NCBI RefSeq assembly: GCF_003704095.1
Contig: NW_020843860.1
Location: forward strand, 1-64,000
Origin: Pocillopora damicornis
Taxonomy: Eukaryota
Direction: 5' to 3'
DNA length: 64,000 nt
Positions 4,801-47,326 of this stretch are shown piece after piece (the first letter of the stretch is position 1; each line of letters starts with the position of its first letter). Made by a program: the position numbers and the translations under genes. Under the pieces are notes generated by a model. The model had not been told where the DNA came from and ran no database searches. It saw only the letters and a program-made list of their open reading frames with translations.

Positions 4801-7800
4801 TAGATACTGGCAAATTTTTAGGCAAGCCTGCTGAAATGCTGGGGTGGTAAACTTTCAATAGACTGGCATCCCATCTAGGGGGAAGTAGTAATACTCCCAA
4901 TCACTTCATGCTCAGGAAACCAGGATAAACTCCAGCTGGATGAGCCACTTTGACTCTTGGACTGAGTCTCACAAACCCAAACTGACACACATGTTAAGTT
5001 TACAAAGCATACAAAGTATAAAGTTGCATTTACACACTTGGAATTGTAGAGACACAGAGGTAAATTAAGGGAGATTAATACTGGTAATAGGACCAAGTGG
5101 AGTCCAATTTGTCTGTTCTCAGACTAGTGATTAACAAAATTGGACAACTATGAAGGGGGAGTCCGATTTGTCAATCATGAGTATGATTACCAACAGAATT
5201 GGATGACACGAAGTCCAGTTACCAATTAATCATGACTGTTTGAATTTCCAAAAAAACAAACAAACAAAAACAAATACACTTAGGACAAACATCTCCAAAA
5301 TTGACAATGTTTAAAGTAAAAAATTCTTCCATTTAGGAAGTTCCCCAGTTTCTTTTTTCAGGGTAAGTAGTTGTTTCTATGGTTATGGTGATCAATTTTG
5401 TGATTGGTGGATTTAGCTGAGGGAGTGGACTTTAGTTAGTATGATTGACTGCTTCAACTGTCTGCTAATGCACCAATCATGTTTGAGGCATGCAGTTTTG
5501 GTAGGAAATGCAATTTTTGCAATGCTATTTAAGGAAAACAACTATTTTTAGCCTCTGAGAGGGAAAAGGTGCCTGATGCCAAATCAGCAAAAGGAGATGA
5601 TGCAGAGGAGGAGGAAGAAGTTGTGGTGGAGTTGTCCGATGAAGAAGATTCAAAGCCAAACCCTAGAGACAGCAAAAAGATTGTGGTCAGGAGGTAATTC
5701 ATTTTTCTATCTATGATTTTTCTTGTTGTGCTGGGCTCTTACAGAACCTTCAAAGGGGTTGTAAAGCAAAGGCTAATGCTCTAAATGTCTATTTGCTCCT
5801 CAGAGATGAGATAACAGACAAGGGAGACACATGGAATCTACCGGAGGCTGGTGCATTTATCACCTTTTCTCCAGGATTTCTGAAAGAACCCTTGTGGGTC
5901 TCTTGTTCCATGTGGAGTCCTAGATCCCTCTCTCCTCCCATAGGCAGTAATGAGCTCTTGGTGAGTAATTTGATTGAACTATCTTATGAAGGCCCACCAA
6001 CTCTAGAGTCTGGGGAAGCTGCTACAGGATGCATAACCATGGGTTTGTTGCACAGTGCCTCTGATTTCAAGGGATATGAAGTAGTTATTAAGAAACTGGT
6101 TGACCAAGAAAACAATGAATGGGAAGATTTGGAAACAAGAATCATGTGGAATTCAGCAGGTATTTAAACTCAAGTTATTAAAATCATTTATCTACCCGAC
6201 TGGATATTTGTTATTATCCCAGCTATAAATCCAAAGGAAATTTTCTCCTCATACAGCTGTAGGTGCAATAATGATGATTATAATATGGCAAGGTAGTCCT
6301 GAGGTAAATCTTAGTGTTCTGATTGGTTCTTACTTGGTCAGTATTTTGCCATACAGAGTGTTTCCATGGAAACAGTTGTAAGCTCTGTATTTTTTTTTAG
6401 TTAAAGTAAGCAAATTCAAAATGGAAAAGTTTGGTCTGATTGCCATATGATAAACTACTTACTATGGGAACCTTGTTTTCAAAATACTGGATTTATATAG
6501 AGCAAAACTTGTCTTTATATATTGCAGACAAATTCATTTCCACAGTACAAGTGTAGATCCCCAATTGAGACTTATATTCCAGGTGTGCAGTTATCAAAAG
6601 CCAATTCATTTCTTTGATTGAAAGGTTAAGAGTGAGAATGCATCTGACAGCAAAGCTACAGATCGTTTTTTATTTTTTTAGAGAGTCGATGTAATACCCC
6701 TGTCTCTCTTTCCAAAAGGTATAGGTGACTTTTCTGGCAGGAGCTCAGGGGAGGGCCTAGTTTTTAATATGGAATCCCGCTAGGTACCCTTCATGCTGAA
6801 GAGTCAACTAAATTTACTAAATAAATGAATTTTTCATATTCTTTCTTGAAGAAATGAATCCAGCTGTTATGGACTGCCCATATGCTGAAGCGACTTGCTC
6901 TGGAATCTGCTTTACCTCCTTTGCGGTTATTTGGCGCCTGAAGTCTTTTGTCTTTTGGAAGACAAAGAATTTGAGCCCCGAGTTTACTTGCACAGTGCCA
7001 GACTATCCAAATGTCTGTGTTTCAATCCCATGGAATTCTGTTCCTGACAACACAGACTTCTCTTTAACTCTAAAGGTAACTAAACTTAGTGTAGGTTTCA
7101 AATAAGTCAAACCATAGCCACCTATAATGTCGGTGTCATAAATATTTGTTGTTCCTTCTGGATCACAGGTACAGGAGGCACCAAGCACCGATGGCAGAGT
7201 TGGAATCTTGTTGGGTCCGGTTCTTCACATTTCGTGCTCACATGGAATAACGCTCTTGGAGCCAGCAAAAATCAACCTTCCTCTTGCACTTTTTAAAGGT
7301 GATAGAGAATTGTTGGACATGCACTCAGGTCAGTGGAGGATATTTCACTTTCAGCAGGAATGGAGAGATATCACAGATCGGTTGGAGATGTCAGTTGCTA
7401 TTACAGATGGAATAGTGAGATTCAAAGTGAAAACTTTCTGCAGGTAAGTAAAGGTTCTCATTGGTTAAAATTTAAATTACATTAAAAATGTTCGTTGATC
7501 CCGGAAGTGTTCGTGATGTTATCACTTATAGACCAAGTAATGGTCAACCTCATGCATACTGTACTACTACGACTATGCTGAGAAAGACGAAAACGATAGC
7601 GTTAACGACCACGACGTCAACAAGGACGAGAATGACGACCATGACATGGACGAGGGCATGGACGAAGGCAAGGACAAAGAAAAATTGATAACATGGACAA
7701 GGAGGAGGGACGAGGAAGAGGAGGATGAAGAGGACGAGGACAAGGAGGGAGACGAGGAAGAGGAGGAGGAGGAGGAGGGGAGGAGGAGGAGGGGGACAAG

Positions 7801-13412: not shown

Positions 13413-13512
13413 NNNNNNNNNNNNNNNNNNNNNNNNNNNNNNNNNNNNNNNNNNNNNNNNNNNNNNNNNNNNNNNNNNNNNNNNNNNNNNNNNNNNNNNN
13501 NNNNNNNNNNNN

Positions 13513-20900: not shown

Positions 20901-21913
20901 TGAAGCTTCTCGGAAATCACCCACAGACTGTGCGCAGCATTTTTCAACGAGGGGTCCTTCAGGCCAATCTTAAACACCCAAAAGAAGCTTTGAAGCTGTT
21001 TCTTGAAGCATGGGAGATGGAAAAGTCACTTGATGCAGGAAACCATAGTGAAGTGTGGCGAAAGATTATCACAGGTGTGGAAGATATGTGTGATTGGACA
21101 CTCAGTTTTCTACGGAAGAGGTCATTTAGGAAAGAGGCTTTCAAGTTTTGTCAACGTTTCTGGGAAGAACAGAAAGCTTCTCAACAATTCACTTTCAATA
21201 TGTTTAACAAAGGCATCGTTGATGCTCTGAATGATCTTGCTCATGACAAGAAAGACAAAGCTGTAGTACAAAAGGAACAGTTTTGGTTCTACGAGGCGAG
21301 GTGCAATGCCAACGAGAGAGAGTTTCAAGAGAAGTTTCATTCGGAAACTGATAATGATGCTCTCTGTGTCATGCTGAGTGAGAGGGAAAATCTCTTGGAT
21401 GACACAGTGGTGCTCTGTTCTCGACTTAAGGAACGCGAGAAGGTGAGGAAATACAAAATGGACAAGGTGGCTTTGTATAAAATGTGTCTGGTGAGAGCGG
21501 ATTTCCTTGGAAACAAAGAGGACAGGTCGGACAAAGCGTCATTGAAAATGAAGGTAGAAAATCTTTACAAAGAGACAGGACAAAAAGGAATGATCGCGAA
21601 ATTTCGAGAGACATTGTTGGATTTGTGGCAAAAGCAGTGGGAAGAAGGAAAAAGTAATGAAAAAACGGAGAAGATCGGCTTGGAAAGGGAGAGAACAATC
21701 GAGGGAATTCTCAATCTGTGCCTGGAACTCAAAAAAGTAAATATGTACAGACGGTATGGACAAGAAGCATTGAGCTTTTATGAGGAGATATGGGAGATAA
21801 AACATGCCAAGATGAAGGACCGTGAAATGAAGAAGTTTCTTCGTAAACTCAAGGAGTTAGCATCGTCCATTGAAGATTACACCAGCGAGAAGTTCTACAA
21901 AATTGCATTACAG
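17958..21913 (+). CDS. NLR-like copy C: 3' half of NB-ARC exon (17958-18821) + long TPR/helical exon (20280-21913)
   Basis: KGFPL, YDIHPLL, ..DDGKTG| donor at 18821; acceptor TACAG| at 20279/80; TPR ORF 20258..22045; donor CAG|GTAAGA at 21913. Confidence 0.88.
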
Positions 21914-22310
21914 GTAAGATCACGCTTATTTATCAACAAAAGTAAACGTCGAGCCTGTCTGTTATGCAAGCAGCTTTTTGTATCAGCTGTTCTCTCTTCA
22001 CTTTACACACATGACGTAACTCTTTTACTTCCAAGATCTTATTAGTGATTCTCCTTACTTTCTACCAAACAATTCTTATGATGTTATTTTGGATAATTTG
22101 GTTTTGGATCAACTTGTAATATCCTTATGGATATTTTTCTTAATTCTCACAACTTTTCTGCTTGGTATTGCATTGGTATTGTAAGGAGAACTTCTGTCTT
22201 GGTCACTCTTNNNNNNNNNNNNNNNNNNNNNNNNNNNNNNNNNNNNNNNNNNNNNNNNNNNNNNNNNNNNNNNNNNNNNNNNNNNNNNNNNNNNNNNNNN
22301 NNNNNNNNNN

Positions 22311-27599: not shown

Positions 27600-30270
27600 C
27601 TTTACCTTAATGTCTCTTTTTCGAGGGGGAAGGTCCATTTCTAGTTTGCACAGTTTATTTTCTGTCTTCTGTTCTCTGCTGTTGTAGAACTCAATTTTTA
27701 GCCATCCTTTGTCGACAACGCGTACCCTCAAACTCCTCTTAAAGGAATCATCTTTTTCAAATCTGCAAGGCATGGAGGAAAAAGTCTTAACGTATAAAGA
27801 AGATTAGGGATAATCGTCTTCTAAAGTTATCAAAATTTTTCCTAAGTTCTTGTTAGAGTGAAGTTCGCTAAAGGAAGTAGGTCATGAAATTGTGGGCCAT
27901 TTGGAGCAATGATTGAAAAATAAAGGCTAAAAGCTGTGCAATAGCTAAGGCGGTACCTTCGTTACATGACCGTCATGATTCGAGCATTGATATTGCTCTG
28001 CCAAATCGTAGCTGCGAAAAATCATTTGATTATCAAGTTCTTACAACTAACACTTCTCCGCGCAACTTCGTCATAATGGTAGTATAACTGAAAAAAATTT
28101 CAGATTCACAAGGAGGCATAGTACATTGGCCGCTTGCAACCACAGCTGAATGTTCAGATGCAATTGTAATTTTTTGTCCACATAGATTTACTTTTCAAGT
28201 ATTACATTCGTGCTTGCTATTGTGTACTTCAACTATTGTAACGGTTCTAGTTTCAAACATTCCATTTGATTTAAAATTATAACGTATTTGCATGTAACGA
28301 GTCAAAACATTACAACGCTGATGGCATGAGTCACACCGAAACATGGCTTTGAAAAGTTCTCTCGTGAAACCGAAATCTATTTTAAGTATGGGTAATAAAA
28401 TTATTTCGAGTGCAATTTGTTGTTAATAACCACGATTAAATTTTGTACAGACAACAAAATTGCACGAGCCCGTAAAGCAATTGCAATTTGTAGTCTTTGA
28501 AAAATGTACAAGTGCCTATTACACCAAATTGCAAGATAAAACATGTTATTACTTGATAATAATGTACATGAAAAAACATCACAGAGACACGACAAACGAA
28601 ATTTGAAACCGTGCACGCGCTAGTTGCAATCTTCATTCGTGTTACATGATGATGCACTCGTTTTCAGCCAATCAGGAGCGCTTAATTTTTTCATGCATAT
28701 TATTATAATAAAAAAGTAATGATCAACCACATTTAATCCATGAAACTTCTCCGAAAGTACAAACACTTTTTGGAACTTCACGCAAAAATATCCAAACACT
28801 CTGCAATCATTCTAAGACTTGGTCTGAAAATATTTTTTGATATTGCATTGTATGCTGCATCTTAAATTTCTAACATCTGATGGACAAACAGCCACTCGAC
28901 CAGATGAACCGACTAAGTTCAAATTACCTCAAGAGAAGGTGACTCACCCACCATCATGGTCACAAAAATTTCAAATTTCTTGTTAATCAATATTTTGTTA
29001 TTTCAGATCAAACTAGATGTTCTAGGTATCGACAAATGCCTACCGAAGTGTTACCTGACAAAAAAGTCTTCTAAATCCGCGACCTCGGCCGGCTGAACCA
29101 CGCTCCCTGAAAAAAACACATAAGCCACGTCGTGAGGTGCCATGTAATCCCATGCATTTTCTTCTTCCAACAAGTATTCCTCCTCATCTTTAATGTGCTT
29201 CCGTGTCGCGTTACTTGAACTGCAAATCACACGCAGCATTTTTGTAGAACCTAAGCTGGTATTTGCTGGAAGACAAGCTGTAAAAACTGCCACTTGGGGC
29301 ACATTGTGTGTGTCAAAGCTACGTGCTAATTCGACCATTTGTGACAAGACTGGTTTAACGCACCAATCTATCCAGCCCCAAAGTCTGCAACCAAACAAAA
29401 GCAACACCAGAATTACCTCCCTCCTGCAACTAACTTGAGCTTAAAACATAAAATAATCCCCTTGCCATTCAAAAAATATATAACGATACTGATAATGATA
29501 ATAGTAATAATATTAATATTATCAATGACAAAATCAAGCAAAATACAACAGAAGCAAAAGCAGAGCTCGTGGTTTTACAAAGCGCAAGATGTGAATCATT
29601 TGTAGACAGTGCGAACAAAATTTCGACCCCTGATTGACGAGTGAGGCGAATTTACATAGGTAAGATGATGTTTGAAATCTAATATTCTTTCTAGAGATGC
29701 TTTTAATCTACTAACAAGTAAATCAAAGAAGATTGGGATGCAGGTGTATCGCAAGAAAATAATTCACGCGTTAAATAAACATCAGCTGTATGTTCCCCGA
29801 TATTGTCATGCTAATTTCAACCCGATCTATCTTGATTCCCTACGCTTTGTTTTGCTTCCAGTTATTTTTGTTCCGAGTTGAGGTTTTTCAAATATTGCTC
29901 CAATAGAGACGCAAAGCACTCATAAAACATCTAAAAATTTGAAAGCAGTTACTTTGGCATACCTCGAGAAGTGCTTCACACTGAATTTGATGAGAGTCCC
30001 CTCCAGCCAAGGGGGGGAATCAAGAACATCTGTAATTTCGGTCCATTCTCGTCCTGTTCCATCAGATGGTTGCAACAAGACTCGGGCACGGACGAATGAC
30101 AGATCAGGAATACCCAATAACTCAGCTGCCTGATCCGTGTCTCTTAAGGATAACGGCAGCTGTACAGTGACTGGTTCCTGGAACTCCACCTCCTTATTGC
30201 ACAGAACACTGAGTATCGGGCCGGCCAACATCTCCTTGTTTCTTAACTCTCTGCTGCGAAATTCTTGTAT
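27600..30270 (-). CDS. NLR-like fragment F: ZU5-2 exon with HFS motif and UPA-like exons
   Basis: Exons (minus strand) 30270-29963 (..FQEPVTVQLPL..WTEITD..FSVKHFSR|), 29384-29055, 27762-~27600. Confidence 0.85.
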
Positions 30271-31372
30271 CTACAAGCAATGGAGAAACAAAATTCAGTC
30301 AGTTGGACGAGAAAGCGAGCCAACAATAAATTGTGGCCAGCGTAAAATCCATTTCTAAAACAAGATTATTTGTTTTTATCAGCTGAGTTGCTGATGTAAA
30401 TTGCCCACTATAAAGAGATATTGAGCTGACTTTTCGAGCGTTAGCCCCTCTTCAGAACTAATATTAATCATATGAAATTTTCATTTATTTAAGACTTCAC
30501 GTTGCCATGCGTTGAGTGGTAAGAGAAGTTTTCCTCACTGTTTTCCTCGAACTTCGCCCTTGGTCGCATCTCGGAACAGATAATGTCCGCGGACAAATAT
30601 CCGTGCACGTTTTCGCGCCAAATGAAGGCTACTGTTTATATATAGCGACAGAAAAAAAGAACAATTTTGGGCTTAACCAATTTAATAACTGGAAAAAGAA
30701 AACGAACTAAAAAACATTTTTTTTTTTGACTCAAAGAACCACAAAAAATATTTTTTGCCCAACTCAAAGAACCATGTAACTAGCCGNNNNNNNNNNNNNN
30801 NNNNNNNNNNNNNNNNNNNNNNNNNNNNNNNNNNNNNNNNNNNNNNNNNNNNNNNNNNNNNNNNNNNNNNNNNNNNNNNNNNNNNNGTTGATTTCTTAAC
30901 TTGTCTTTTCCAAGAATTTACAGTTCATGTTTTAATGCTTCTGCAATACCAAAAAGCCCCTTAACTCAAACAGTATGAAATCGGCCCTTTCAAAAGGGTC
31001 CGTATGGTGTTAAAATGAACAATAATAACCTACCAAGGCTTTTCCTTTGTTTGTTTGTTTTTGTCGGTTTCGTGTTGTTGTGTTTAGTGTTTTTTTACTT
31101 GAATTTGATATGGACACGATCCACCTAATAGATAACTTGCGCAACAAACATTTCTGAGTTTGATGACTTATCATTCTAACATTACTTACACAGTACAAAA
31201 AGCTTCCAGCAATAACACCATAATATACATACTAGAGAAGAGTGTCGACCTACCAAGTTACATATGAAAATAAAAGAGCCGAAATGAGGAAGTTTCAAGG
31301 CATTATCAAGTGCAGTGACCCTCATTTAAACTGGTAACTTGTTCTGAATTTTCATCCTTGGCTTATTTTCAG

Positions 31373-34093
31373 ATCTGCAGATAGCTTATCGCGATGATTT
31401 TCCTGATTATTGCCTTCCTGTTGCTGAGACTAAAATTACCCAGTGTTCCACATTTGCAGTGGTTTGCCGTCTCAAGGCCCACAAGTTCACCATAACCTCG
31501 CAACCGTCCACCCTTTCATTACCAGGCTTCCCATTGGTCAAAGTGTACTTTCCCTCAAACGCAGTCTCCGCCGCAGAAGAATTGCACGTGACTGTCACGG
31601 TAAGTGTCTGATTGCGTCAAACAATTACAGCTAGTTACATGGTTCTTTGAATTAAGCAAAAAGATTTTTTGTTAGTTAGTTTTTTTTTCAGTCATTAAAT
31701 TTATTAAGTACAAAATTGTTGTTCTTTTTTTGTAGTCTGTCGCTCTATATAAACAATAGCCTCCATTTGACGCGAAAACATGCTCGGATATTTGTTCGCG
31801 AACATTATCTGTTCCGAGATGCGACCAAGGGCGAAGTTCGAGGAAAATGTGAGGAAAACTGTGAGCGTAGAGCTTCTTTTGTAACTCGACGCACGGCAAC
31901 ACGAAGTCTTTTTATTTCGTACGATAAGAAAAAAAAATGCGCGTATGAGCGTATGTAAGTGATTATACGCACGTTATAAATTGAAATTTATTATATTTGA
32001 CTGATTAAGATAATGTGAATTGGCCATCGTTTAGATTCTCTAAAGCTGACATTTCAAATATTAGTTCTGAAGAGGGGCTAACGCTCGAAAAGTCAGCTTA
32101 AGATCTCTTTATAGTGGGCAATTTACATCAAATTATATTTGTAAACGGAATAAGAGAGATGGTAAGTTTTGACCTCAGTAAAGAAATAGAGAAGGATGTT
32201 TTTCGTCTTGTCGCGAGCGTGGGACAAAGAAAAAATCTGAGCCCCCATGAGGAATCGAACCTCAGACCTTCGGATGGCGCCATCGACATTGCTGATCGTA
32301 ATAGTATGCAGGACGCGTGTCATATGACTGAACTTCGTAAGAGACCTCGCTCACCGTAGAGTCTCTGTGGCTCAGTGATAGAGCATCGGAGCGCGGAATC
32401 CGAAGGTTTTAGGTTCGATTCCTCGTGGGGACTCGAAAAAGGAAATCTTTCCCAACGAATTGTCTTGTTTTAGAAATGGATGTTACGCTGGCCAAAATTT
32501 ATTGTTGGCTCGCTCCCTCGACCAACTAACTGAATTTTGTTTCTCTATCACCTTTAGATACAAGAATTTCGCAGCAGAGAGTTAAGAAACAAAGAGATGT
32601 TGGCTGGCCCGATACTCAGTATTCTGTGCAGTAAGGAGGTGGAGTTCCAGGAACCAGTCACTGTACAGCTGCCGTTATCCTTGAGAGACACGGAACAGGC
32701 TGCTGAATCATTGGGTATTCCTGATCCTTCATTCGTCCGTGCCCGAGTCTTGTTGCAACCATCTGATGGAACAGAACGAGAATGGGCCGAAATTACAGAT
32801 GTTCTTGATTCCCCCCCTTGGCTGGAGGGGACTGTCATCAAATTCAACGTGAAGCACTTCTCGAGGTATGCCAAAGTAACCATCTGCTTTCAAATTGTTA
32901 GATGTTTAATGAGCGCTTTAAGTCACAAGGGGAGCAATATTTGAAAAATCTTAATTCGGAACAAAAAAAACTCAAACCGAAACAAAACGTAGGAAATCAA
33001 GGTAGATCGGGTTGAAATTAGCACGACGAAATCAGGGAACATACAGCTAAGTTTATTCATTTTCTCGCGGTACGCCTGCATCCTAATCTTATTTGATTTA
33101 CTTGTTAGTAGATCAAAGGCATCTCTCGAAACAAAATCAGTACCTGTGTAAATTCGCCTCACTTGTCAATCGAAATCTTGTTCGCGCACTGTCTACAAGT
33201 GATTTACCTCTTGCGCTTTGTAAAAACACGAGCTCTGCTTTTGCTTCTGTTGTATTTTGCTTGATTTTGTTATTGGTAATATTATTATTATTATTATTAT
33301 TATTATTATCAATATCGTTATATATTTTTTGAAAGGCAAGGGGATTATTTTATGTTTTAAGCTCAAGCTAGTTGCAGGAGGGAGGTAATTCTGGTGTGGC
33401 TTTTGTTTCGTTGCAGACTTTGGGGCTGGATAGATTGGTGCGTTAAACCAGTTGTGTCACCAATAATCGAATACGCGCGTAGCTTTAACACAGAAGATGT
33501 GCCCCAAGTGGCAGTTTTTACAGCTTGTCTTCCAGCAAATACAAGCTTAGGTTCTACAAAACAGCTGCGTGTGATATGCAGTTCAAGTAACGCGACACGG
33601 AAGCACATCAGACATGAGGAGGAATTCTTGTTAGAGGAAGAAAATGCGTGGGATAACATGGTACCTCGCCAAAGGGCTTATGTGTTTTTTTCAGGGAGCG
33701 TGGTTCAGCCGGCCGAGGTCGCGGATTTGGAGGACTTTTATGTCAGGTAACACTTGCGATTTGGCATAGCAACATCGATTCCCGAATCATGACGGTCGTG
33801 TAACGACGGTTACGACTTAAGCTATTGCACAGCTTTTAGCCGTTATTTGTGAATTACTGCTCAAAATGACCGACAATTTCATGGCCCACCTACTTTAGCG
33901 AACTTCATCCTAACAAAAACTTAGGAAAATAATAATAATTCTAAGAGACGATTATCCCTAAATCTTCCTTATACGTCAAGACTTTATTCACCATGTCTTG
34001 CAGATTTGAAAAAGATGATTCCATAATAAGAAAGTTGAGGGTACATGTTGTCGACAAAGGATGGCTAAAAATTGAGTTCTTCAACAGCAGAGA
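31373..34093 (+). CDS. NLR-like fragment G: ZU5-1/ZU5-2 (HFS) and UPA-like exons
   Basis: Exons 31373-31599 (DLQIAYRDDFPDYCLPVAETKITQCSTFAVVCRLK.., not in the ORF track in this frame), 32558-32865 (..FNVKHFSR|), 33417-33746, 34004-34093 (gap). Confidence 0.85.
32140..32440. mobile_element. tRNA-derived SINE-like insertion with internal inverted repeat
   Basis: TGGCTCAGTGATAG (A box) and GGTTCGATTCC (B box) at 32386-32435, with an inverted partial copy at ~32238; absent from the homologous intron of fragment F. Confidence 0.7.
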
Positions 34094-35786: not shown

Positions 35787-37428
35787 ATGGCGGCAGTTGA
35801 AACTGCACAGCTACAACAATTCTTCGAAGACATTTCTCTTAAGATTACCCCGGCAGAAACGGAAAATGTTGTGCATTCTTTTAAACGGATATATGGGGGG
35901 AAGTTTAAGTCGTTGGAAAGCCACGATCTGTTGAAATGTTTGCAACTTCTTGCTAAGCAAAGGTATGTAACCGAAAACAACCTGAAACTCGTAGAAGACT
36001 TCGTTGCTCCGAAATGTAGCCAACAGAAGGACATTGAGGAGGCACTGAAAAGTTTAAAGGCCTCTCGTCTGATGAAAGCTGATCCAAAAAAGGAATTAAA
36101 AGGACGGAGCGATGAAATCACGAAAATCAATAGAAAACTTGAATCAAAAGATATTGCACTTCTAAACTTGTTTGGGTCGTCCGGGATAGGAAAGACAGAG
36201 CTTGCAAAAGAAGTTTGTTCAAAATGGAAAGGGATTTCTCGAATTTTTGACCTGAGGAAGGCACAGGATATGACAGCGATCTATCACAACATGCTTCATT
36301 CTCTCGAACTAGCTGTTCCAGCCGGTCGTGTTGAGCAATTGCAAGAGTATGTTGTAGCAAAGGTTCAAGAGAAAGTGAAAGAGCTGAAAGATGGGGAACA
36401 GCCTGTTCTTTTTATGCTGGATAATGTGGACCAATTTACCGCAGGGAAAAAAGAAGAGGGGAAAAGGTTAAAAAAAGCATTCCTACGCTTTTTAGAAGAA
36501 CTTTTAGAAAGTGAAGAAAAAAGACTTCCTTTAAAACTGCTTCTTACTTCAAGCACTAAGTTAGAGGAACTCAAAAAGATGGATGATTTTGAAGTTAAGT
36601 CTCTTGAGAGATCTTTTTCAGAGAAAATCCTCATCCCTGAGGGAATGACTGATGTAAAAACCCATCAGAAGGATCGTTTAATAAGCATTGCCAAAGGAAT
36701 CCCTCTTATTTTGAAAGGACTGGCTGCTATCTTGAGACAGGAACGAAAATCTGTTGATGATCTCATTGCAAGCGTCACTGCCTCTTCACAGCAATCTGAA
36801 GCAGAGGGAGATGCAAGAAGTAGTGTACTCACTTTTGAGCAAGAAGGAGTAGACATGGGTCAGATGTCAGTGATTCAAGAAATGTTTGATACACTTCCCA
36901 CTGAAAGTTTAAGGGTATCTGCAGTAGTAATTTCCTTGTTTCATGGACCTTTCTCTGTGAAAATGGCTGCCAAAGTTCTTGGTTTTGATGAGGTGGAAGC
37001 CATTGCTCAGTTAGAGGGACTCGTAGCCAGTGAAATAATTTTTGTTGTTGATGAAGAAGCAAAAGAGAGGAAGTATGACATTCATCCACTATTACAAAAG
37101 TATGCTGATAGTATCAAGAGTCTTGAAGACTTTAATACTTCTTTCCTTGAGGCAAAGGAACGCTTCTATGAACTCTTCATGTACAGGATGAAGAAAATTG
37201 CAGAACTCATTGAGCCAGATTATGTCAAAGCATTCCATTTGTTTGAGAGTAACAAAGCCAACTATGAGTACACTGTTGAGATCTCCTTGCAACCAGAATA
37301 TTTCAGTGTTCCAGCTGAATTCCGTGAAAATGCCTTGATGGCATCCCTTTTCATCGCAATGCTGCATGAGAAACTGATCCCGGTCTTTGGTTCCTGGGCT
37401 GAGAAATGTGAAGATGATGGAAAATCAG
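35787..37428 (+). CDS. Copy E exon 1: DED-like + NB-ARC
   Basis: ORF 35787..37592; GSSGIGKT, FMLDNVD, KGIPL, YDIHPLL. Confidence 0.9.
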
Positions 37429-40400
37429 GTACTTTTTCAATAATAAATTCTAATTTATTCAGTAATTTTCCCCACTGTCTGCCATACTATTTTTATGATG
37501 TTGATATGGTGAATTTGATTTTAGATCAACTAATAATTCCCCAATTGATATTTTCTTTATTCTCATCACCTGTCTGCTTGATATGGTATTAACATTGTAG
37601 GGAGAAATTCTGTCTTGGTCACTCAATTGGGAGTTGAAGGGTTAATGCTTGAAAATTTTAAATTTCAATTAAAATTACACAATGCATATTGATCTTTGTA
37701 AGGTAGAAAGTTCTCTTATTTTCCCAAATGTGATTGATGCATTAGCTGCTTTATTTTTCCAATGATTATTATCTAATCTAAGTGTAATTGACAGACAGTT
37801 GACTGTAATCTGACAGTTAACCCTTTAACTCTCAGATCAAATTTGTAATTCTCCTAAATGTCAACCATACAATTCTTATAATGTTAGTTCAGAGAAGTTA
37901 GTATTGGATCAACTTATTATCCCCAAATTGACATTTTTCTTTATTCTTATCACTTATCTGGTTGACATTGTGTTGATGTTGTAAGGAGAAATTCTGTCTT
38001 GGTCACTCATGGGAGTTAAAGGGTTAAAGCTACCAATCATATTAAGTCCACTCAGCTAAATTCATCAATCACAGAATTTATTAAAATAACTGATAGCAAC
38101 AACCACTTCCCTACAAATCTGGGAAATTGTCTAAAGGAAGGAATTTTTTACTTTAGAAAATGTCTCTCTGGGATATATTTTTCTCACAGTCAATTTTGAC
38201 TTATTTCCACAGTAATTTTATTTTTCGGAAATTACAATGGTTATGATAAATTGGTAACAGGACTTTGTCCAATTCTGTCTGTAATCATACTGGTAAAAAT
38301 AATTAACAAATCAGACTCCCTCTGCATAGTTGTCAGATTTTGTTTATACCTTGTATGATTACAGACTTAATCAAAACTATAACAAAATTCTTGAACTTGA
38401 CTGGTTATGACCAGCTCAATCTGAGTACTAATAAGTAGTGTACATGGCATGCTTTTAATTGGACAGTGTAATAGGACTGTTAAGGGGTCAGNNNNNNNNN
38501 NNNNNNNNNNNNNNNNNNNNNNNNNNNNNNNNNNNNNNNNNNNNNNNNNNNNNNNNNNNNNNNNNNNNNNNNNNNNNNNNNNNNNNNNNNNCCATGGCTT
38601 TCCTCTAGATTGAGATGTTGGCAATTATGTTTAGTGTCAGAGTAAGGAATTGGCATGGCCCCCATCTTGAAAGGGTTAGGGAGCATTATATGGGGGACAC
38701 TAAAGCAAAGGACTTCTAAGTTTTTCTGCTAAGAATCCATCAGTCATGGCTGAGATCGAACCCTCTTCTCTTATTTGTGAGTTTGGAAAAGCCTCATAAG
38801 TCAGGCCCTATTGAATTGCGTAGCTAAAGGGGCAGGAATAGGGGTAGTTATGTTTGTTATTTTATTTCTAATTTGTTTGCTTAATCATCTTTACATAGGT
38901 TCCCTTGCTCGAGCACAGTTGAAGTCTTGGGAAGCCAGACAAGTTGCAGATGTTGTTGGGACTGAGAAAGCATTCAAAGTATTGAAAGAAGCTCTATTTT
39001 CAATGGAGAGAGTTGAAGACAAATCTAGCGAGTCCTTTAAGCTCACCAAAGGCCTTTACTTGCACACTGAAGGAGAAATTCTCTGGAGAAACAGAGACTA
39101 TAAAAAAGCACTTGCAAGCTTGACGTTGGCCTTAACATTCTCTGAGCCGCTGCTGAAAGAACATACCGATCTTGCAAGGTGCTACAATGCAATTGGAAAC
39201 TGTCATCTAAGTCTGAAACAGCCCACAAAAGCGCTCGAGTTCTTTGAAAAAGCCTACATGATGCAAGAGAAATTAGCAGCCTCTAAGAACCACTTCGACT
39301 TGCCAATGTACAAGCAACAGATTGGAGCGGCGTATGATCATGATGGCCTGAAAGATTATGAAAAGGCAGTTGAATGTTACAAAGATGCACTGGGACTGCT
39401 GGAAGATCTCAAACTCCTAGGTTGTTTGGATGAAGCACACTTCTGTAGAAATCTTGCAAATGTGCTTATGTTTCAAAAGAAATATTCAGAGGCAGTCAAA
39501 CCTGCAGAAAGGGCTCTCAAGATTAGGATGGATCTTCTAAAAAATCATCCACTGACTGTGCGTAGCATTTTTCAGCGAGCGGTTCTTGAAGTTAATCTTG
39601 AACATCCAAAAGAAGCCTTGAAGTTCTTCCTTGCAGCATGGGAGATGGAAAAGTCACTCGGGGCGGGAAACCACAGTGAAGTATGGCGAAAGATTATTGA
39701 AGGTGTCAACGCTATGTGTTACCGCCTGAAAGAAAAACGACAGTGGGAAAGATTTAGGAAAGATGCCTTTAAGTTTTGTCAGCGATTCTGGGGAGAACAG
39801 AAAGTATCTGCACAATTCACCTTCAATAAGTACAACAGAGAAATCATTGATGCGCTAAAAGAGTATGCTATTGATAAGAAAGACAAACATGCAGTGCGTA
39901 AGGAACAACTTTGGTTCTACGAAGGGATGTGCAATGTCGACGAGAGAGAGTTTCAAGAGACGTTTGAACTGGAAAACGATAACAATATCCTCCTTGATCT
40001 GTTGAAAGAACGAGATAGGCTCTTAACCGATGTTATACGCCTTTGTTCTGAACTTCACGAGCGTGAGAAGCTTGCAAAACACAAAGAACACAAGGTGGCT
40101 TTGTACAAAATGTGTCTTGTTAAAGCGGGTTTTCTTGGTGACAAGGCAGATGGCTTGGACAAAGCGTCATTGAAGAGGAAGGTAGAGGAACTGTACAAAG
40201 AGATAGGAAAAGAACGAATCATCCTGGAATTTAGAGAGACATTGTTGGCTTCTTGGCAAATGCAGTGGGAAGAAGGAAAAACCAAAGAAAAGGCGGAGAA
40301 GATCGGCGTTGAAAGAGAAACGACAATCGATGGCATTCTCCAGTTGAGCAAAGAGCTGATGAAAGATACTGTGTACAAACAGTATGGACAAGAAGCGTTG

Positions 40401-43400
40401 AGTTTTTATGATGAATTATGGGAAGTAAAGCACGCTTCCTTGAAGAATCCCGAAATGAAGAGGTTCCTTCTTAAAGTAAAGGATTTGGCGTCGTCCATCG
40501 GTGATTACAGGAGTAAAAAACTCTATGAAGATGCATTAAAGGTAGGAGTTTACTCATGTGTCAAACAACCTTAAACGTCAATGCTGCACGATTTCTTGTA
40601 CGCTTTGCTCAGAGACAGCGAAGGAGCTGTTCGTACTAGCTGGTTCTTTGCAGGTATCGTTTACAATCTACTATCTTTTGTAATTTGTTTTGTTTTTACC
40701 CTTTTTTTGGTCCTGTTTTGGTTTTTGGAGAAATTTCACTTGGTACAAGTACCTTCGGCATCAAATTTACCTTACAGAGTGAGACACCAATAATTTTTCA
40801 GGAAATATTTTTGCATCTATGTTTTTTTTAGTGACTTACAACTTTTAAATCAATGATTTGAAGAGGCAATTAAGGATACTTATATTTAGAAAAACTCAGT
40901 TGAGTTTGAAATATTGTTCCTTTCTTCATGAGTCTTTGTACTTTGTTTCCAGGTGCTGAATGAAACTGGGAAACATCCAGGGGCCATATTGAGACCAAAA
41001 GGTAACACGCTTAGTTTAGATAATAACATGATTTCAAGCGCAATTTGCTGTTAGTAGCAAGAGTAAATTTTTCAAAGACAACAAAACTGCAAGAGCCTGT
41101 AGGGCAAGTGCAAAAAGTCTTTGAAAAATTTGCAAGTGCTTATTACACCAAACTGCGGGAGAAATCATGTTATTATATGTGAATAATGTACTTGAAGAAA
41201 CATTACAAGATGTCAAGACAGACGAAATTTTGAAAGCGTGCGCGCGCTATTTGTAATTTGCACTCGTGTTACATGAGAATGCACTCGTTTTCAGCCAATC
41301 AGAAGCGCGTAATTTTTTCATGAATGTACATTATTATTCTGTTATCTGAGTATTTACTTTACCCATAAGTAACTTCTGTTTTCCAGTATTGTATCTCAAT
41401 TGGTTTTATATATTTAGATACCTTGAATGTTGTAGTATGAAATTCTGAAACAACATCGTGCTTATTTTTACTGAGCTTTATATCGACTTCTGCGAGTGTT
41501 ATGACTTCGTTTGGAAATTGATAACAATAGTACCTTGAGTCTTAAGTTTATCAGAATTTCAAGTCTTGTAAAAATTCTTTTCTGATCTCTTTAAACAACA
41601 AAAAATTAAGAGAACAATAGTGGAGAACAATTTGAATGTGTTGAATTCAGAGACATAGGGGTTCTTGCTTTATTCCAGAAATCTCGGCTTTTGTTTTTCA
41701 AAGGTGCATTGCCATTGGTTCCAGTTGGACATGAAGCTGTATTTAGAACCTTGTCCCTCTGTTTTTACTTTTATTTATTTTGTTTTCCATTAGCTACAAG
41801 TTCCACTTCTAAATCGAAGAGAGAAGAGAAGGATGATGAAGAGGAAAAAGAGGAAATTGAGATTGAACAGAAAAAGGAAGAGCTCGAAATTGGCTTAGAA
41901 GAAGAAACTGAGGTTGGGGCAGAGATGGAACCCTCTTCTGAAGGTGTTCAAACTGATGAGAGAAGCATCATTTTCAAGTAAAGCCATGTTACATTTATTA
42001 TTTCAATAGACATTAGTATTTAGTTAAACAGCGGAAAGCGTTCAAAGTGCGCTCTGATTGGCTACTCAAACTCAGAATACCTTTGCTATTCATCTCCAAG
42101 CAACTCGGATTAATTATATGGATGTGCGTGCTCTGATTGGTCGTCGTCTCTCGCTATACTCAGCCATTGGGAGAAACTTTATTGTCAGAGAAAAACTAAA
42201 TGAGAAAGCGGGATGTTTGTAGCTTTTATCATTGTTTCAAGAGCTCACAGTGCACATAGCACCCCTTCAGTTCAGCGGGTGCTTTTCTCTATAACCTGAA
42301 GTTTAGAAAATTGTAAATATAAATGTTTCAATACCCTTACAACAAGAACACTGATGTAATATCATATTATGTTTATGGTATACAACACCAAATGGTATAC
42401 AAGGTGTGCAATTCACTAGATATTTTTTCTTTCAATTCACAGAGACACTGTAACAACACAAGGTGGCCGCTGGGACTTGAGGAAGGCAGCAACTCACTTG
42501 GTATTTCCTCGTGGTTTTGTTGCTGAGGACACTATATTGACTCTTTTTCGATTGAAATCCTCACTGTGTTCTCCTCCTCTTCAGCCAAATGAAGCCATAG
42601 TCAGCAATGTTCTTGAATTATCGGCAGACACTCCTGAAAGTCTTCTATTCAATAAAGAAGTCACGCTTGGAATTTCGCACAGTGCGTTGGACCTTAAAGG
42701 ATATGAAGTGGTGATTAAGACCTTGATAGACAGAGAGAGAAATGAATGGAAGGACGTCGAGCAAACAGTTGATTATAGATCTCTGTCAGGTAAGCATTGG
42801 AAGTCATCGTGAATTAACCATGGTAACTTGTGTTCAAGCAATAAAGTGGCCTCTCTCAAAAATTGTTCAAAAGTCAACTTGTCAAAGCGTGTCGATCTTT
42901 AACAGTTTTATCAATGTTCTCCGTTTATGTCGGTGGTTTTTTTTACTTTTCTTCTCCCCATTATTTCAGATAGTTTGATCAGTACACTTACCCACACTGT
43001 GTACAAGTGCATATTACTGTTTGAAAGGGAACCTTGCACTGCAATTTTTTGTTTCTGTAGGGAACGAACTGACTGTAAAACACAAACAGCAAACAAAAAA
43101 ACGTAAGAATATGTACCTTGATTCTCCCAGGGCGATTCTTATATAAATGTTGGTGATAGAGGACATCTGCCTGTAAACGACATTTTCAGGGAGAAGAACA
43201 CACAATATACCGTCAATCTATTAGATCTTGTGGTTGTTGGTTCGCCAAACAGGTTCTTGTGGCGAAAGGTGGCTACTTATGAAAAAAGTGTTGGCTGGGG
43301 GTGGGGGGGGGTCCCATTGGAAGAAGGAAGCTGGTTGGAGAACGAAGTAAGCGGTTTTTAATAAACATGTAACAAAAGGATATCCCGTATTCACGATTTG

Positions 43401-46400
43401 TCAATTGACTGCCTAAAAATTATTTTTGCAGATCTTCAGAGAGTCTATCACGATAATTTTCCTGACTATCTTCTTCCTGTTGCTGAAACGAAGATTATCC
43501 AGTGTTCTACCTTCGTTGTGGTTTGCCGTCTCAAGTCCTACATTTTTACGATAACATCAGAACCGTCTACCATCTCTTTGCCTGATTTCCCTTTGGTGAA
43601 GATTCATTTTCCACCAAATTCGGTCTCGTCCACTGAAGAATTCAGTGTCAGAGTAAGTTTTCTTATGTAGGGAAGAAACAAATTCGACGATGCAGTTTCA
43701 TTGGCTCAATATGTTCATCGTGTGAGTGGTCTTTTATCTGTGATGAATCATCTCGTCAGTAATTATTGTTACAGTTGTGTTTAATAAATGTAATGTTATT
43801 AATATTTATCATCGACTGAGTGATTAACTGTTTAGCTCATGCAACTCTTAGGTACAAGAATATATTTGAAAGGAATTGAAAGGCAAGGAAACGCTAGCTG
43901 GCCCCATCATAAGAATATCTTGCAACAAGGAGATTAAGTTTCAAGAAGCTGTCACCGTCCAGCTGCCGTTGTCCTTGAGAGACACTGAGCAGGACGCTGA
44001 ATCATTGGGTATTTCTGATTTGTCCTTAGTCCGTGCTCGAGTCCTGTTTCAACCATCTAATGGTACACAGCGAGAGTGGACTGAAATCACAGATCTTCTC
44101 GATTCCCCTCCGTGGCTGGATGGGTTTGTTATCAAATTCAACGTGAGACACTTCTCAGGGTACGTCAGTGCATCTCTTTACTTCTTTACTTTTTGCTTAC
44201 CACATCTGTCCCACTCTAAGTGGTACCTTTTCACATTTTTAGTTTATAAGCATTTTTGTGGAAAACCTGTTTGGTAGCCAAGGCTGTTAGATGTGAATCA
44301 ACTGCAAAACATTTGAATGAACAGATTGAATATTGTATTAAGTCATTTTAGCAGTGTTGAGATTCTCGTCCTCTTTTAAATCCTTACTGTTTTTCAATTT
44401 TGTTTCGTTTTCCTGTTGTGTATGCTTTCGTTTTTGGTTTGCGTTTTCGTTTATTTGGTAGAATGTCATAAGAAATCTTGATTGTACAATTTTGAGGAAC
44501 GTGTATTGACATTGGACTGTGTTCCTTTCCCCTTTTTTCTCGAAAGATTTTGGACCTGGCTCGCATCACCATTAACCCAAATTGCCCGTGCATGGAATAC
44601 GGAGAGTGTACGGCATTCAGTCGTTTTCACAGCTACTGTTCCAGTGCATACTAGACTTAACACCGATGTAGATCTGCTTTTGTACTGCAGTCCAAATGAC
44701 AAGAAAAGAGAACACATCGATGATGAGAAGATGGTTTGGTTGATAGAAGAAAGTGCATGGTACAGCATGGTCACTGATGATCAAGCTTACGTCTTCCTTT
44801 CAGGGGATGCAGCGCAAGTAGTCAATAAGGAACGACTCAAGAATTTTTTTCTCAGGTAAATTTAAAATAGGTTTGCTGAGTGTCTGTTAAGTGCTTATAT
44901 AGAAAGAGACAGACACTACGCCATGGAACGAATGGCTTTCCAAGAAATCTCCGCCTTGTAAAGTCCTTACTACAAAATAGGTTGTAAACGACTATGAATG
45001 TATGAAAGTCATAGACTTGAACTGCGGATAAAGACGTGAATTTGAACCCATGATCTCTGCGGTGCAGCGCTCTACCATCTGAGCTTACAAGCCAACTGGG
45101 AGCTGGTCATTCAACATAATGACCAGCTCCCAGTTGGTTTGTTAGCTCAGTTGGTAGAGCGCTGCACCGGTATCGCAGAGGTTATGGGTTCAAATCCCAT
45201 ACAGGCCTGAATTTTGTTCAGGCCTTATATCCACTACTGCTCAAGTAGTGTTCATTACTGCGAAAATCGCTAATACATTCAAAACAGATTGTCGTCATTC
45301 ACATGATCTCTCTCTAAAATGAAGATAATTTTCTATTGGTATCATTTTCTAGCACGTATATTTTTATTATATTCCACTCAAGTAAACACTGCTTTTCACG
45401 CTCCCTAATTGACCAGCTCCAAGTTGACTAAATAAATAAATGACTTGGGACAAAGTTTGGGTTGGCGACACAAATCAAATGAAGTTGTTTAATCTTCCCA
45501 GCCTAATATTGTAGAGCAAATGTCCAAGTTACCGATTGCTGTCGAGAATTATGAAAGGAACAACGCCCTCGTAGTTAAGCTAGTTTAGTTCTGTTAATAT
45601 ACCAAAAAACTGGTTGGAAATATAACTCCTGACTCGAGATGTTGTCTTTTCAGCTGCTCAGAGCTGAATGGTACTTGCTGATCACCTCCAAACCAGCCAA
45701 TCAGCGCGTGCGAAAAGCATTATTTATCTGTGTGGTTATACTTATTGTTAATTATCTAATTAGAATCCAATGAAGGAATTTCTTTAGTGAAAAACTGATG
45801 GAGAAAATGAAGCGAAAATCTTCGACTATTTCCAGTTATCCCTGTCTTTGAATGCTGCTATTTCCACAGGTTTGATAGAGAGGCTTCTAATTTTAGACGT
45901 CTGGCGGTACACGTGGTAAACAAAGGCGTCCTAACGATAGAGTTCTACAAAAGTAAAGATCGGAGTGATGGAAATATGATTGGTGTACTGGATATGAAAC
46001 TGCCTCCCGCGCTGGACCTTGCGGTGAGTATCTTTAGTCAGCGCCGTACAATATCATTTGTTGGTAATAGCTGTCCCTATCTCCTCCCCTTGCCACTTTC
46101 TAGAACAAACTAGGACCTTACACAAATATCTCTACAAAGAGTACAAACAGTTCAGAGCCACTTTAATTTTCAAATATATGGGTGGATCAGAGCCATTGGT
46201 ACATACTTTTTTATTCAACTTAACAGAAAGGTGATTGTTGATATGTTGGTTGCAATTCGTTTTTGACTTTTAAAGCACATAAAGGGCTATGACTAACATG
46301 CTGAGTAATAATTGGACATTCTTTTCACACAATTCTCTGGGGAACACATGGAAAAATATGTTAGTTTTGATTTGTTACAAAAAAAAGTGTTTCAGTAATA

Positions 46401-47326
46401 CAGAAAACATTCTGAGTTACTATTAGGTAAGGTGACTGTTGAAGTGTGAAATAACTTTAACTTGCAGAGTACTCCTGTGAAGTTTCTAGGCATTCCCGTA
46501 GATGACAGAATACTTCACGAAGCTCCTTTGGCCGAAATCCTGGCAGCATGTAACGGGGTGTTAGAGAAAATAGGCCGGTGGGATATTCATGAAAGTCATT
46601 TGCGAAGCAACCTCGATGAATTTCGCAAAAAATGTAGTTTCTACGGAGCTCTTGCGAGCTTACCCGTAGAGTATCAACGAGAGTGCTGTGATGCAATCAT
46701 TAGCTTTCTGAGGGAGCACAGACGAACCGGTTTCGAAGGCTTTAAACACATCGAAGAATATCTTATTCATGGTAAGTATGTAAAGCAATTAACTTTTTTT
46801 TCCCATTTATATATCAGTAATTTACCTTCAATAATACTTCCGAAGCTTCGTTAGAAAGTTAAAACTCACGGGAAACTTTTTAAAGACATGATTCGACATG
46901 ACTCATGCCATTCTAGTTTATTGTGTTGCATCCGTTGACTATGTTTTTGCACGCTACAGTCGACATATCTGCAAAAGACAAACGGCAATCACTTTTAAAA
47001 TGAACCTCGTTTATTCTTTCATTTGTTGCTGAATCCATCTGCGTTTGCTCTAGACTCACACACACGTAGCTTTTGACCACACTAGCGCACTCTTTTTCTT
47101 TACTGTTTTATGTGTTTTCCGGTTTGTGTTATATCCAGATGAGGGCCTTTTTTTCCCGGCCTTTCCACGGTACTCCATTCTGTAAATTGTAGCATTCGGG
47201 TTTTTAATTAAGAAATGTCACGGCAAATTTGCTGACACCCATCTGCTTACTCCTTAGAAGTGATCCCAGCTTGCTATTACATAACCTACATTTTTTTTTT
47301 TAATTTCCTTAGCAAAAGATGCCTGA
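35787..47326 (+). CDS. NLR-like copy E, most complete: DED-like - NB-ARC - TPR - acidic - ZU5-ZU5(HFS)-UPA - helical/CARD-like; contains an in-frame TGA (possible pseudogene)
   Basis: Exons 35787-37428, 38899-40541, 40953-41001, 41794-41977, 42443-42789, 43432-43652, 43852-44159, 44547-44855, 45870-46023, 46468-46771, putative 47313-47326 followed by AATAAA; all junction phases compatible; TGA at 43867-43869. Confidence 0.85.
37817..38027. mobile_element. ~210-bp TTAA-flanked MITE (piggyBac-like), best-preserved copy
   Basis: TIR TTAACCCTTTAACTC...GAGTTAAAGGGTTAA; related copies at ~2437-2655, 4007-4217, 4218-4428, 4547-4757, 22025-22210, 23775-23975, 37455-37645. Confidence 0.8.
38899..40541 (+). 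CDS. Copy E exon 2: TPR + helical region
   Basis: ORF 38811..40574; acceptor CATAG|, donor AAG|GTAGGA. Confidence 0.9.
41030..41335. repeat. Interspersed repeat, second copy at ~28390-28710
   Basis: Shared AAGTCTTTGAAAAAT..CAAGTGC.TATTACACCAAA and GCACTCGTTTTCAGCCAATCAG..GCG..TAATTTTTTCATG in non-homologous introns. Confidence 0.7.
44993..45282. mobile_element. Palindromic tRNA-derived repeat
   Basis: tRNA-like arm 45136-45208 (TAGCTCAGTTGGTAGAGC; GGTTCAAATCC) facing its own reverse complement at ~45042-45110; related copy at ~58600-58870. Confidence 0.75.

What the first reader, a model, noticed from the sequence alone, without database searches (positions are those of the whole stretch)
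44075..44561. Intact PIDD-type HFS autoproteolysis motif at the end of the second ZU5
Seen: spliced copy E reads WTEITDLLDSPPWLDGFVIKFNVRHFS-G|FWTW (HFS at 44149-44157). F and G read ..KHFS-R|LWGW (29965-29973 minus strand; 32855-32863). All are preceded by F(Q)E(P/A)VTVQLPL. Known: PIDD1 self-cleaves intein-style between F and S of HFS in the context W.DIT...F.V.HFSW.W.W, preceded by FLQPVTVQLPL (context recalled from memory). Inference: these receptors are cut into a sensor half and a UPA-effector half. The motif sits right at an exon boundary, so the released half is also a clean exon-shuffling unit.
Basis: partly seen in the sequence, partly recalled or inferred. Interest (0 to 1): 0.85.

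Follow-up and report, generated by a model that had tools for sequence, protein, structure and literature searches.

The report
Coral immune-receptor self-cleavage motif, partly decayed
Three copies of a coral NLR-like immune-receptor gene carry the His-Phe-Ser motif that lets PIDD1, NLRP1 and CARD8 cut themselves in two. This is a new member of a known mechanism, and the best-studied copy here (E) has a stop codon upstream of the motif in its own mRNA.

Summary
HFS is encoded at 44149-44157 (+, copy E), 32855-32863 (+, G) and 29973-29965 (-, F). Each time it forms the last full codons of a homologous exon and is followed by a phase-2 GT..AG intron. For E, RNA contigs from three runs confirm that intron.

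The genes are coral NB-ARC–TPR–ZU5–ZU5–UPA–(Death or glycosyltransferase) receptors. Among 41 cluster representatives that reach the site, Phe is invariant (41/41) and the next residue is Ser or Thr (39 and 2). The residue before Phe is His (27), Arg (11), Gly (2) or Pro (1). AlphaFold models of two homologues place Phe-Ser in the two-residue turn between the last strand of the second ZU5 and the first strand of UPA. The whole module matches ankyrin ZU5-ZU5-UPA-DD, UNC5B, NLRP1 and CARD8. A PIDD/FIIND-type self-cleavage site is therefore the best reading for the family, but it is untested.

"Intact" fails for copy E. The RNA-supported acceptor at 43852 puts an in-frame TGA (43867-43869) 93 codons before HFS, and the frame also stops ahead of a Death-domain relic. 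F and G are 88%-identical inverted partial duplicates beside an assembly gap, and their upstream exons are not assembled. The exon-shuffling idea is not supported, because effectors are swapped downstream of UPA.

The mechanism is known; these are new members.

The parts
44149..44157 (+). HFS codons of copy E (CAC TTC TCA), the predicted scissile F|S
43852..44159 (+). Exon 4 of copy E, the second half of ZU5-2, with RNA-supported boundaries
   Evidence: Joints 43652|43852 and 44159|44547 in X1, X2 and X6; translation
43867..43869 (+). In-frame TGA in exon 4 of copy E, 93 codons before HFS. It aligns with Ser in paralogues (VQEFPS.., IQEFRS..)
   Evidence: X1 and X2 RNA contigs cover it with 0 differing letters
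44160..44546 (+). Phase-2 GT..AG intron, starting two bases after the Ser codon
   Evidence: RNA joint in three runs; sequence
44547..44855 (+). Exon 5 of copy E: (G)FWTWLASP..., the first UPA strand and the start of UPA
   Evidence: Homologous to UPA of P0013/P0018, which match ankyrin UPA structurally
43432..43652 (+). Exon 3 of copy E: end of ZU5-1, with QCS at 43500-43508 in the position equivalent to HFS, then the start of ZU5-2
42443..42789 (+). Exon 2 of copy E: first ZU5 domain
   Evidence: Pfam ZU5, 21-30 bits; RNA joints
32558..32865 (+). Copy G HFS exon (IQEFRSRELRNKEML...KHFS + AG), open; HFS at 32855-32863
33417..33747 (+). Copy G UPA exon, beginning (R)LWGWIDW. The 3' end is approximate: the stop-bounded frame ends at 33747 and the donor was not mapped
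29963..30270 (-). Copy F HFS exon, open; HFS at 29973-29965. Part of an inverted duplicate of G, 88% nucleotide identity
29054..29384 (-). Copy F UPA exon, beginning (R)LWGW. The 3' end is approximate (end of the tblastn match)
7433..7441 (+). Copy A: TFC at the equivalent site, followed by the same phase-2 intron (ACT TTC TGC AG|GTAAGT)
47324..47329 (+). Two in-frame stop codons in exon 8 of copy E, ahead of a weak Death-domain-like remnant (47330-47494)

Best explanation
The window holds a cluster of coral NLR-like genes with the architecture NB-ARC ATPase – TPR – acidic linker – ZU5 – ZU5 – UPA – helical linker – effector. The effector is a Death domain or a GT4 glycosyltransferase.

The conserved [H/R]-F-S at the last turn of the second ZU5 is most likely a PIDD1/UNC5CL/FIIND-type autoproteolytic site. 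Phe would be buried and strain the backbone. The Ser hydroxyl would attack the Phe-Ser peptide bond (N-O acyl shift followed by hydrolysis). The sensor half (NB-ARC–TPR–ZU5–ZU5) and the UPA–effector half would then be separate chains, held together non-covalently until activation. The first ZU5 carries QCS at the equivalent turn and probably does not cleave.

Shown here: the motif, its position, its conservation, the fold, the splicing and the expression. Inferred: cleavage itself and what follows from it.

In this particular window the motif is mostly a relic.
- Copy E is transcribed and correctly spliced around HFS, but carries an in-frame TGA upstream in the same exon and stops before its Death-domain remnant.
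- F and G are diverged inverted partial duplicates whose upstream exons are not in the assembled sequence.
For: - Motif and splice sites.
- RNA joints for the whole ZU5–UPA part of E in three runs from two studies.
- Architecture: NB-ARC, TPR, ZU5 and GT4-conflict exons in the window. Full-length coral relatives (Montipora, Acropora, Porites) have NB-ARC/TPR/ZU5/Death or glycosyltransferase.
- Conservation: F 41/41; S 39 and T 2; residue -2 is H 27, R 11, G 2, P 1. HFS in 18 of 24 full-length proteins listed, 17 of them acroporid. RFS in 109 of 119 in a Porites-like subfamily. Further HFS, HFC, TFC and RFS exons elsewhere in this genome share the same intron.
- Fold: P0018 model, pLDDT 81, has F338-S339 between strands 330-337 and 340-347. 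P0047 model has F101-S102 between strands 93-100 and 103-110.
- Structural matches: Foldseek ankyrin-B ZU5-ZU5-UPA-DD E=2e-30, also UNC5B, rat NLRP1 and CARD8. VIA Z 27 (ankyrin-B), 17.4 (UNC5B), 16.7 (NLRP1), 16.0 (CARD8).
- Non-cleaving ankyrin has V-S-A where these proteins have R/H-F-S.
- Literature: Ser is essential, Phe is structural and residue -2 is dispensable in PIDD, CARD8 and NLRP1 (PMC3210808). PIDD1-CC, made by cleavage at S588, is needed for signalling (PMC7883297).
- Decay of E.
- F/G inverted duplication.
Against: - No biochemical evidence of cleavage exists for any member.
- Pfam Peptidase_S68 (the PIDD site model) matches neither the genome nor three full-length relatives.
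- Pfam does not call the second ZU5 or UPA on single exons.
- Structural aligners superpose the NLRP1 and CARD8 ZU5 on the first ZU5, not the second. The one-ZU5 model P0047 gave no clean residue-level match to the NLRP1 C-terminal fragment. Equivalence of the ZU5-2 F-S with NLRP1 F1212-S1213 therefore rests on an internal-repeat alignment (weak statistics) and on secondary-structure position.
- The accessory His/Glu residues known for CARD8 could not be mapped.
- The tripeptide alone does not guarantee cleavage.
Confidence: 0.65

Rival explanations
1. The ZU5-ZU5-UPA module is only a structural scaffold, as in ankyrins and UNC5A-D. F-S is conserved because Phe fills the hydrophobic core, and no self-cleavage occurs.
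For: The closest structural and sequence relatives are non-cleaving ankyrins. Peptidase_S68 does not match. No accessory catalytic residues were identified.
Against: Ankyrin has V-S-A at this turn, so the fold does not need F-S. Yet F and the hydroxyl or thiol residue are invariant over 41 clusters, and the only replacements of Ser are Thr or Cys, all nucleophiles. The -2 position is mostly His, as in PIDD and Nup98 (PMC3210808).
Confidence: 0.2
2. Copy E still makes a cleavable receptor. It would do so through a minor acceptor at 43873 that skips the TGA, or through stop-codon read-through.
For: An AG at 43871-43872 would keep the frame. Contigs drop rare isoforms, so absence is not proven. 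The transcript is seen in several samples.
Against: The only joints into this exon go to 43852 (three runs), plus one out-of-frame joint to 44030. Paralogues all begin the exon at the VQE/IQE position. The frame also ends in two stops before the Death-domain remnant, so decay is seen at two places.
Confidence: 0.1
3. The two halves are separated by a trans-acting protease, or not at all, and the conserved intron after HFS marks a module boundary used for exon shuffling.
For: The intron phase and position are conserved across all genomic fragments, which read on as S-[GRKE]-Y from GTA.
Against: No family member shows ZU5-2 without UPA or a different partner after HFS. The variable effectors are attached after UPA and the linker. 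Conservation of an intron position shows ancestry, not shuffling.
Confidence: 0.05

Closest known systems
PIDD1 (LRR–ZU5–ZU5–UPA–Death)
   Same: Two ZU5 domains, UPA and a Death domain in the same order. HFS at the ZU5-2/UPA junction, followed by an aromatic-rich strand. In PIDD1, cleavage at this second site (S588) makes the signalling fragment (PMC7883297, PMC3210808).
   Different: The sensor part is NB-ARC plus TPR, not LRR. The first ZU5 has QCS instead of a second HFS. Some members end in a glycosyltransferase. The Pfam PIDD-site model does not match.
NLRP1 / CARD8 FIIND (ZU5–UPA, SF|S)
   Same: A STAND-type NTPase receptor with a ZU5–UPA module just before a death-fold effector. F|S at the junction, with a variable -2 residue. 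Structural match Z 16-17.
   Different: A single ZU5 in FIIND against two here. NACHT-LRR and CARD against NB-ARC-TPR and Death/GT4. The aligners pair the FIIND ZU5 with the first ZU5, not the second.
Ankyrin ZU5N–ZU5C–UPA–DD supramodule
   Same: Best sequence match (E=4e-32) and best structure match (Foldseek E=2e-30; VIA Z 27) over the whole module.
   Different: Ankyrins have V-S-A at the site and, to my knowledge, are not reported to self-cleave. They have no NTPase or TPR part.
Coral NB-ARC/TPR NOD-like receptors with Death or glycosyltransferase domains (PMC8260672, PMC10236652)
   Same: The same gene family and domain combinations, expanded in tandem arrays.
   Different: In the passages and searches made here, those surveys list the domains but no statement of a cleavage motif or of the ZU5-UPA junction was found.

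Membership tests
ZU5–UPA autoprocessing modules (PIDD1, UNC5CL, NLRP1, CARD8) | Ser/Thr/Cys nucleophile directly after a buried Phe | tested here: met
   F-S in E, F and G. F 41/41 and S/T 41/41 in relatives. Cys variants.
ZU5–UPA autoprocessing modules (PIDD1, UNC5CL, NLRP1, CARD8) | The site lies in the turn between the last ZU5 strand and the strand that follows it | tested here: met
   AlphaFold models of homologues P0018 and P0047. The window's own spliced protein was not folded.
ZU5–UPA autoprocessing modules (PIDD1, UNC5CL, NLRP1, CARD8) | ZU5 and UPA folds followed by a death-fold or other effector | tested here: met
   Foldseek and VIA matches to 4d8o, 3g5b, 7crw and 7jn7. Death domain by Pfam in relatives.
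ZU5–UPA autoprocessing modules (PIDD1, UNC5CL, NLRP1, CARD8) | Residue-level superposition of the ZU5-2 F-S on the NLRP1/CARD8 scissile F-S | tested here: inconclusive
   The NLRP1 C-terminal fragment (starting at 1214) aligns from model residue 192, which is the first ZU5. The one-ZU5 model gave an unclear range. An internal-repeat hhalign pairs ECS with RFS.
ZU5–UPA autoprocessing modules (PIDD1, UNC5CL, NLRP1, CARD8) | Actual spontaneous cleavage that is lost in S-to-A | not testable with these tools
   Needs expression and mutagenesis.
Pfam Peptidase_S68 (PF10461, PIDD auto-processing site) | Match to the 33-position model above 31.9 bits | tested here: not met
   No match in the genome (with no positive control ringing) and none in P0070, P0047 or P0071 at E up to 10.
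Pfam ZU5 (PF00791) | HMM match above 21 bits | tested here: met
   First ZU5 of copy E scores 30.3 bits and 21.1 bits. The second ZU5 is not called on single exons but has the ankyrin ZU5B fold (3ud1, Z 19).
Functional gene (copy E) | Uninterrupted reading frame through the RNA-supported exons | tested here: not met
   TGA at 43867-43869 and two stops at 47324-47329.

The most novel reading that the evidence does not exclude
Coral NB-ARC–TPR receptors work like NLRP1. Constitutive self-cleavage at [H/R]F|S would leave a UPA–effector fragment caged by the sensor half, to be freed when the sensor half is degraded or rearranged. In some paralogues the freed effector would be a conflict-system GT4 glycosyltransferase rather than a death-fold adaptor. 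That would make 'functional degradation' signalling pre-bilaterian and extend it to an enzymatic effector.
Probability: 0.25. Interest if true: 0.7.

Novelty: new member of a known kind. Interest (0 to 1): 0.35.

Why it matters
If the site cleaves, reef-building corals carry many STAND-type receptors built on the same self-cutting ZU5–UPA latch as human PIDD1, NLRP1 and CARD8. That would date the latch to before the cnidarian–bilaterian split. It would also give coral immunology a simple, testable activation mechanism.

The natural variants provide a ready-made mutant series: HFS, RFS, HFC, TFC, and QCS in the first ZU5.

For annotation, the result is a caution. A perfect motif in this window sits in a transcribed copy that cannot be translated through it.

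Tried and rejected
- Pfam on the HFS, UPA, helical and Death-relic exons alone: no significant match.
- Peptidase_S68: no match in the genome or in full-length relatives.
- PDB sequence search with the single exon: nothing. The family profile was needed.
- A transmembrane reading of exon 41691-41981 (weak Pfam noise): rejected. RNA shows the exon starts at about 41792 and encodes an acidic linker.
- Residue-level mapping of ZU5-2 onto NLRP1 with the P0047 model: inconclusive.
- Tinel et al. 2007 (PMC1782377) is not held, so the PIDD sequence context remains from memory.
- Findings search by words: blank.
Exons were handled singly by reference, and folds were made on database homologues.
- N stretches were left as they are.

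Full report
**What is in the sequence.**
The window is intron-bearing eukaryotic DNA from a 234-Mb, 4393-contig assembly. RNA holders are labelled coral or marine metagenomes, and the nearest full-length proteins come from the corals Montipora, Acropora and Porites.

HFS is encoded at 44149-44157 (+), 32855-32863 (+) and 29973-29965 (-). All three lie in homologous open frames that read ...F(Q)E(A/P)VTVQLPLSLRDT...REW.EITD.LDSPPWL.G..IKF.V[RK]HFS. The exon ends two bases after the Ser codon:
- E: TCA GG|GTACGT ... AAAG|A TTT TGG ACC TGG, which reads HFS-G-FWTW.
- F and G: TCG AG|GTATGC ... TGCAG|A CTT TGG GGC TGG, which reads HFS-R-LWGW.

**Splicing and expression of copy E.**
RNA contigs from four runs were laid on 41600-47400. 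Runs X1 and X2 (one study) and X6 (another study) gave GT..AG joints at 41977|42443, 42789|43432, 43652|43852, 44159|44547 and 46023|46468. The joint 44855|45870 was seen in X1 and X2 only. The joint 46771|47313 was seen in all three, though the tool marks what lies between its two sides as not known, as it also does for 44855|45870. The intron right after HFS is thus confirmed in all three runs.

The same data show that the HFS exon begins at 43852. Exon-by-exon translation with phase bookkeeping gives VQEYI*KELKGKETLAGP...RHFS. There is an in-frame TGA at 43867-43869, 93 codons before HFS.
- X1 and X2 contigs cover it without a single differing letter. X6 has one unlisted difference somewhere in the exon.
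- Paralogues start this exon with VQEFPS... or IQEFRS..., so the stop aligns with a Ser.
- There is no Met between the stop and HFS.
- Further on, the frame runs into two stops at 47324-47329. After them comes a weak Death-domain-like remnant, collinear with the Death domain of P0013 (pairwise E=0.014).

Copy E is therefore a transcribed, decaying copy. A rare isoform using the AG at 43871-43872 cannot be excluded from contig data.

**Copies F, G and A.**
F (29046-30374, -) and G (33755-32454, +) are inverted duplicates with 88% nucleotide identity, on either side of the N run 30787-30886. Their HFS exons are open and have canonical splice sites.

G has an exon 3 (31373-31600) but no assembled first-ZU5 exon. 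F has no exon 3. Whether the missing parts lie in the gaps cannot be told, and the gaps were left alone.

Copy A (5802-7441) has TFC at the equivalent codons with the same intron. It is followed by a GT4 'conflict-system' glycosyltransferase exon (PF20706, E=1e-80).

**What the genes are.**
Pfam finds NB-ARC/STAND ATPase exons at 192-1925, 35787-37592 and 13400-14218 (-). It finds TPR exons at 2831-3985, 20258-22045, 23773-25731 (-) and 38811-40574, and a ZU5 at 42444-42716.

A whole-library HMMER search with the HFS exon found 58 relatives. Most are single-exon fragments, together with full-length coral proteins.
- P0013 (Montipora, 1716 aa) reads TPR – acidic linker – ZU5 – ZU5 (HFS at 1325) – UPA – helical linker – Death. 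Its N-terminal NTPase region is not called by Pfam, but close relatives carry NB-ARC.
- Other relatives carry a glycosyltransferase instead of a Death domain.
- The helical exon of E (46468-46770) is homologous to the linker between UPA and Death in P0013 (E=3e-16). It is not a separate effector.

**Conservation of the site.**
Among the 41 cluster representatives (clusters at 50% identity) whose match reaches the site, Phe is 41/41. The next residue is Ser in 39 and Thr in 2. The preceding residue is His 27, Arg 11, Gly 2 and Pro 1.
- 18 of the 24 full-length proteins listed have HFS; 17 of these are acroporid. The rest have HLS, HFT, QFS or RFS, and one has no recognisable site.
- A Porites-like subfamily has RFS in 109 of 119 members.
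- Elsewhere in this genome there are further HFS (3), RFS (1), HFC (1) and TFC (1) exons, all ending at the same phase-2 intron.

This pattern is an invariant Phe, a nucleophile after it, and a tolerant -2 position. It matches what mutagenesis showed for PIDD, CARD8 and NLRP1 (PMC3210808).

The first ZU5 ends in a conserved QCS/ECS-T[FY] turn. A profile alignment of the two ZU5 repeats pairs this turn with RFS (weak statistics).

**Fold.**
The joined window protein was not folded, by instruction. Two database homologues were folded with family alignments.
- P0018 (628 aa; 43% identical to the E exon; RFS at 337-339) gave mean pLDDT 81. F338-S339 is the two-residue turn between strands 330-337 and 340-347. 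C190-S191 is the matching turn of the first ZU5.
- P0047 (368 aa; HFS at 100-102) gave mean pLDDT 76. F101-S102 lies between strands 93-100 and 103-110.

| Structure | PDB | Foldseek E | VIA Z |
|---|---|---|---|
| Ankyrin-B ZU5-ZU5-UPA-DD | 4d8o | 2e-30 | 27.1 |
| UNC5B | 3g5b | 7e-11 | 17.4 |
| Rat NLRP1 | 7crw | 2.5e-7 | 16.7 |
| CARD8 | 7jn7 | 1.2e-3 | 16.0 |

The family profile aligns to ankyrin-B at E=4e-32. There, ankyrin has V-S-A where these proteins have R/H-F-S.

One caveat applies. The aligners put the single ZU5 of NLRP1, CARD8 and UNC5B on the first ZU5 of the coral module: the NLRP1 C-terminal fragment, from residue 1214, aligns from model residue 192. The one-ZU5 model gave no clean range. 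Direct residue equivalence for the second ZU5 is therefore inferred, not shown.

**Mechanism.**
The most likely reading, at about 0.65, is a PIDD/FIIND-type N-O acyl shift at F|S. It would split the sensor half from the UPA-effector half, and the two would stay associated until activation.

Shown: the motif, its position, its conservation, the fold, and RNA splicing. Inferred: cleavage and its consequences.

Pfam Peptidase_S68 does not match, so membership of that narrow family is not claimed.

The exon-shuffling inference is not supported. The intron position is conserved, but no relative separates ZU5-2 from UPA, and the effector swap lies after UPA.

**Novelty.**
ZU5 self-cleavage is well known (PMC3210808, PMC7883297). 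It has been predicted in general terms for invertebrate ZU5/FIIND proteins (PMC8195603). Coral NB-ARC/TPR receptors with ZU5, Death and glycosyltransferase domains have been catalogued (PMC8260672, PMC10236652). The passages and searches I made in the held library turned up no description of the site in these receptors. This is a new member of a known kind, of moderate interest, lowered for this locus by the decay of copy E.

Noticed in passing
window 43867-43869 and 47324-47329: Copy E is transcribed but carries an in-frame TGA in the HFS exon and two in-frame stops before a weak Death-domain-like remnant (47330-47494). It is probably an expressed pseudogene.
   Followed up: yes
window 18666-22210 vs 27322-23790; 29046-30374 vs 33755-32454; 11745-13412 vs 16212-14620 and 35408-34194: Large inverted segmental duplications with 85-89% identity, each bounded by N runs. 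The receptor array is a mosaic of inverted partial copies, and the scaffolding may be unreliable here.
   Followed up: partly
window 45092-45285 (intron of copy E): RNA contig depth jumps to 1300-4100 in all four runs, with many loose ends. This looks like a short, highly expressed or highly repeated element.
   Followed up: no
window 43500-43508; homologues P0013, P0018 and others: The first ZU5 ends in a conserved QCS/ECS turn at the position equivalent to HFS. Cys replaces Phe here, so the first PIDD-like site appears to be lost across the family.
   Followed up: partly
window 7433-7441; L006 (G000:C1579:8584-8835); L008 (G000:C1129:977471-977713): Natural Cys variants of the site (TFC, HFC) with the same intron. 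They may use a thiol nucleophile or may be inactive.
   Followed up: partly
window 9885-11075: A single exon encodes a complete GT4 'conflict-system' glycosyltransferase (PF20706, E=1e-80) downstream of copy A's ZU5-ZU5 part.
   Followed up: partly
window 43468; 43652 to 44030: Run X6 has a 6-base insertion (TCTTCT) after 43468, in frame within exon 3. Run X1 shows a rare out-of-frame joint 43652|44030 that skips most of the HFS exon's first half.
   Followed up: no
window 40980-40999 joined to 41792: Loose ends of RNA contigs at 41792 match 40980-40999. An extra small exon therefore lies between the TPR exon (ending about 40574) and the acidic-linker exon.
   Followed up: partly
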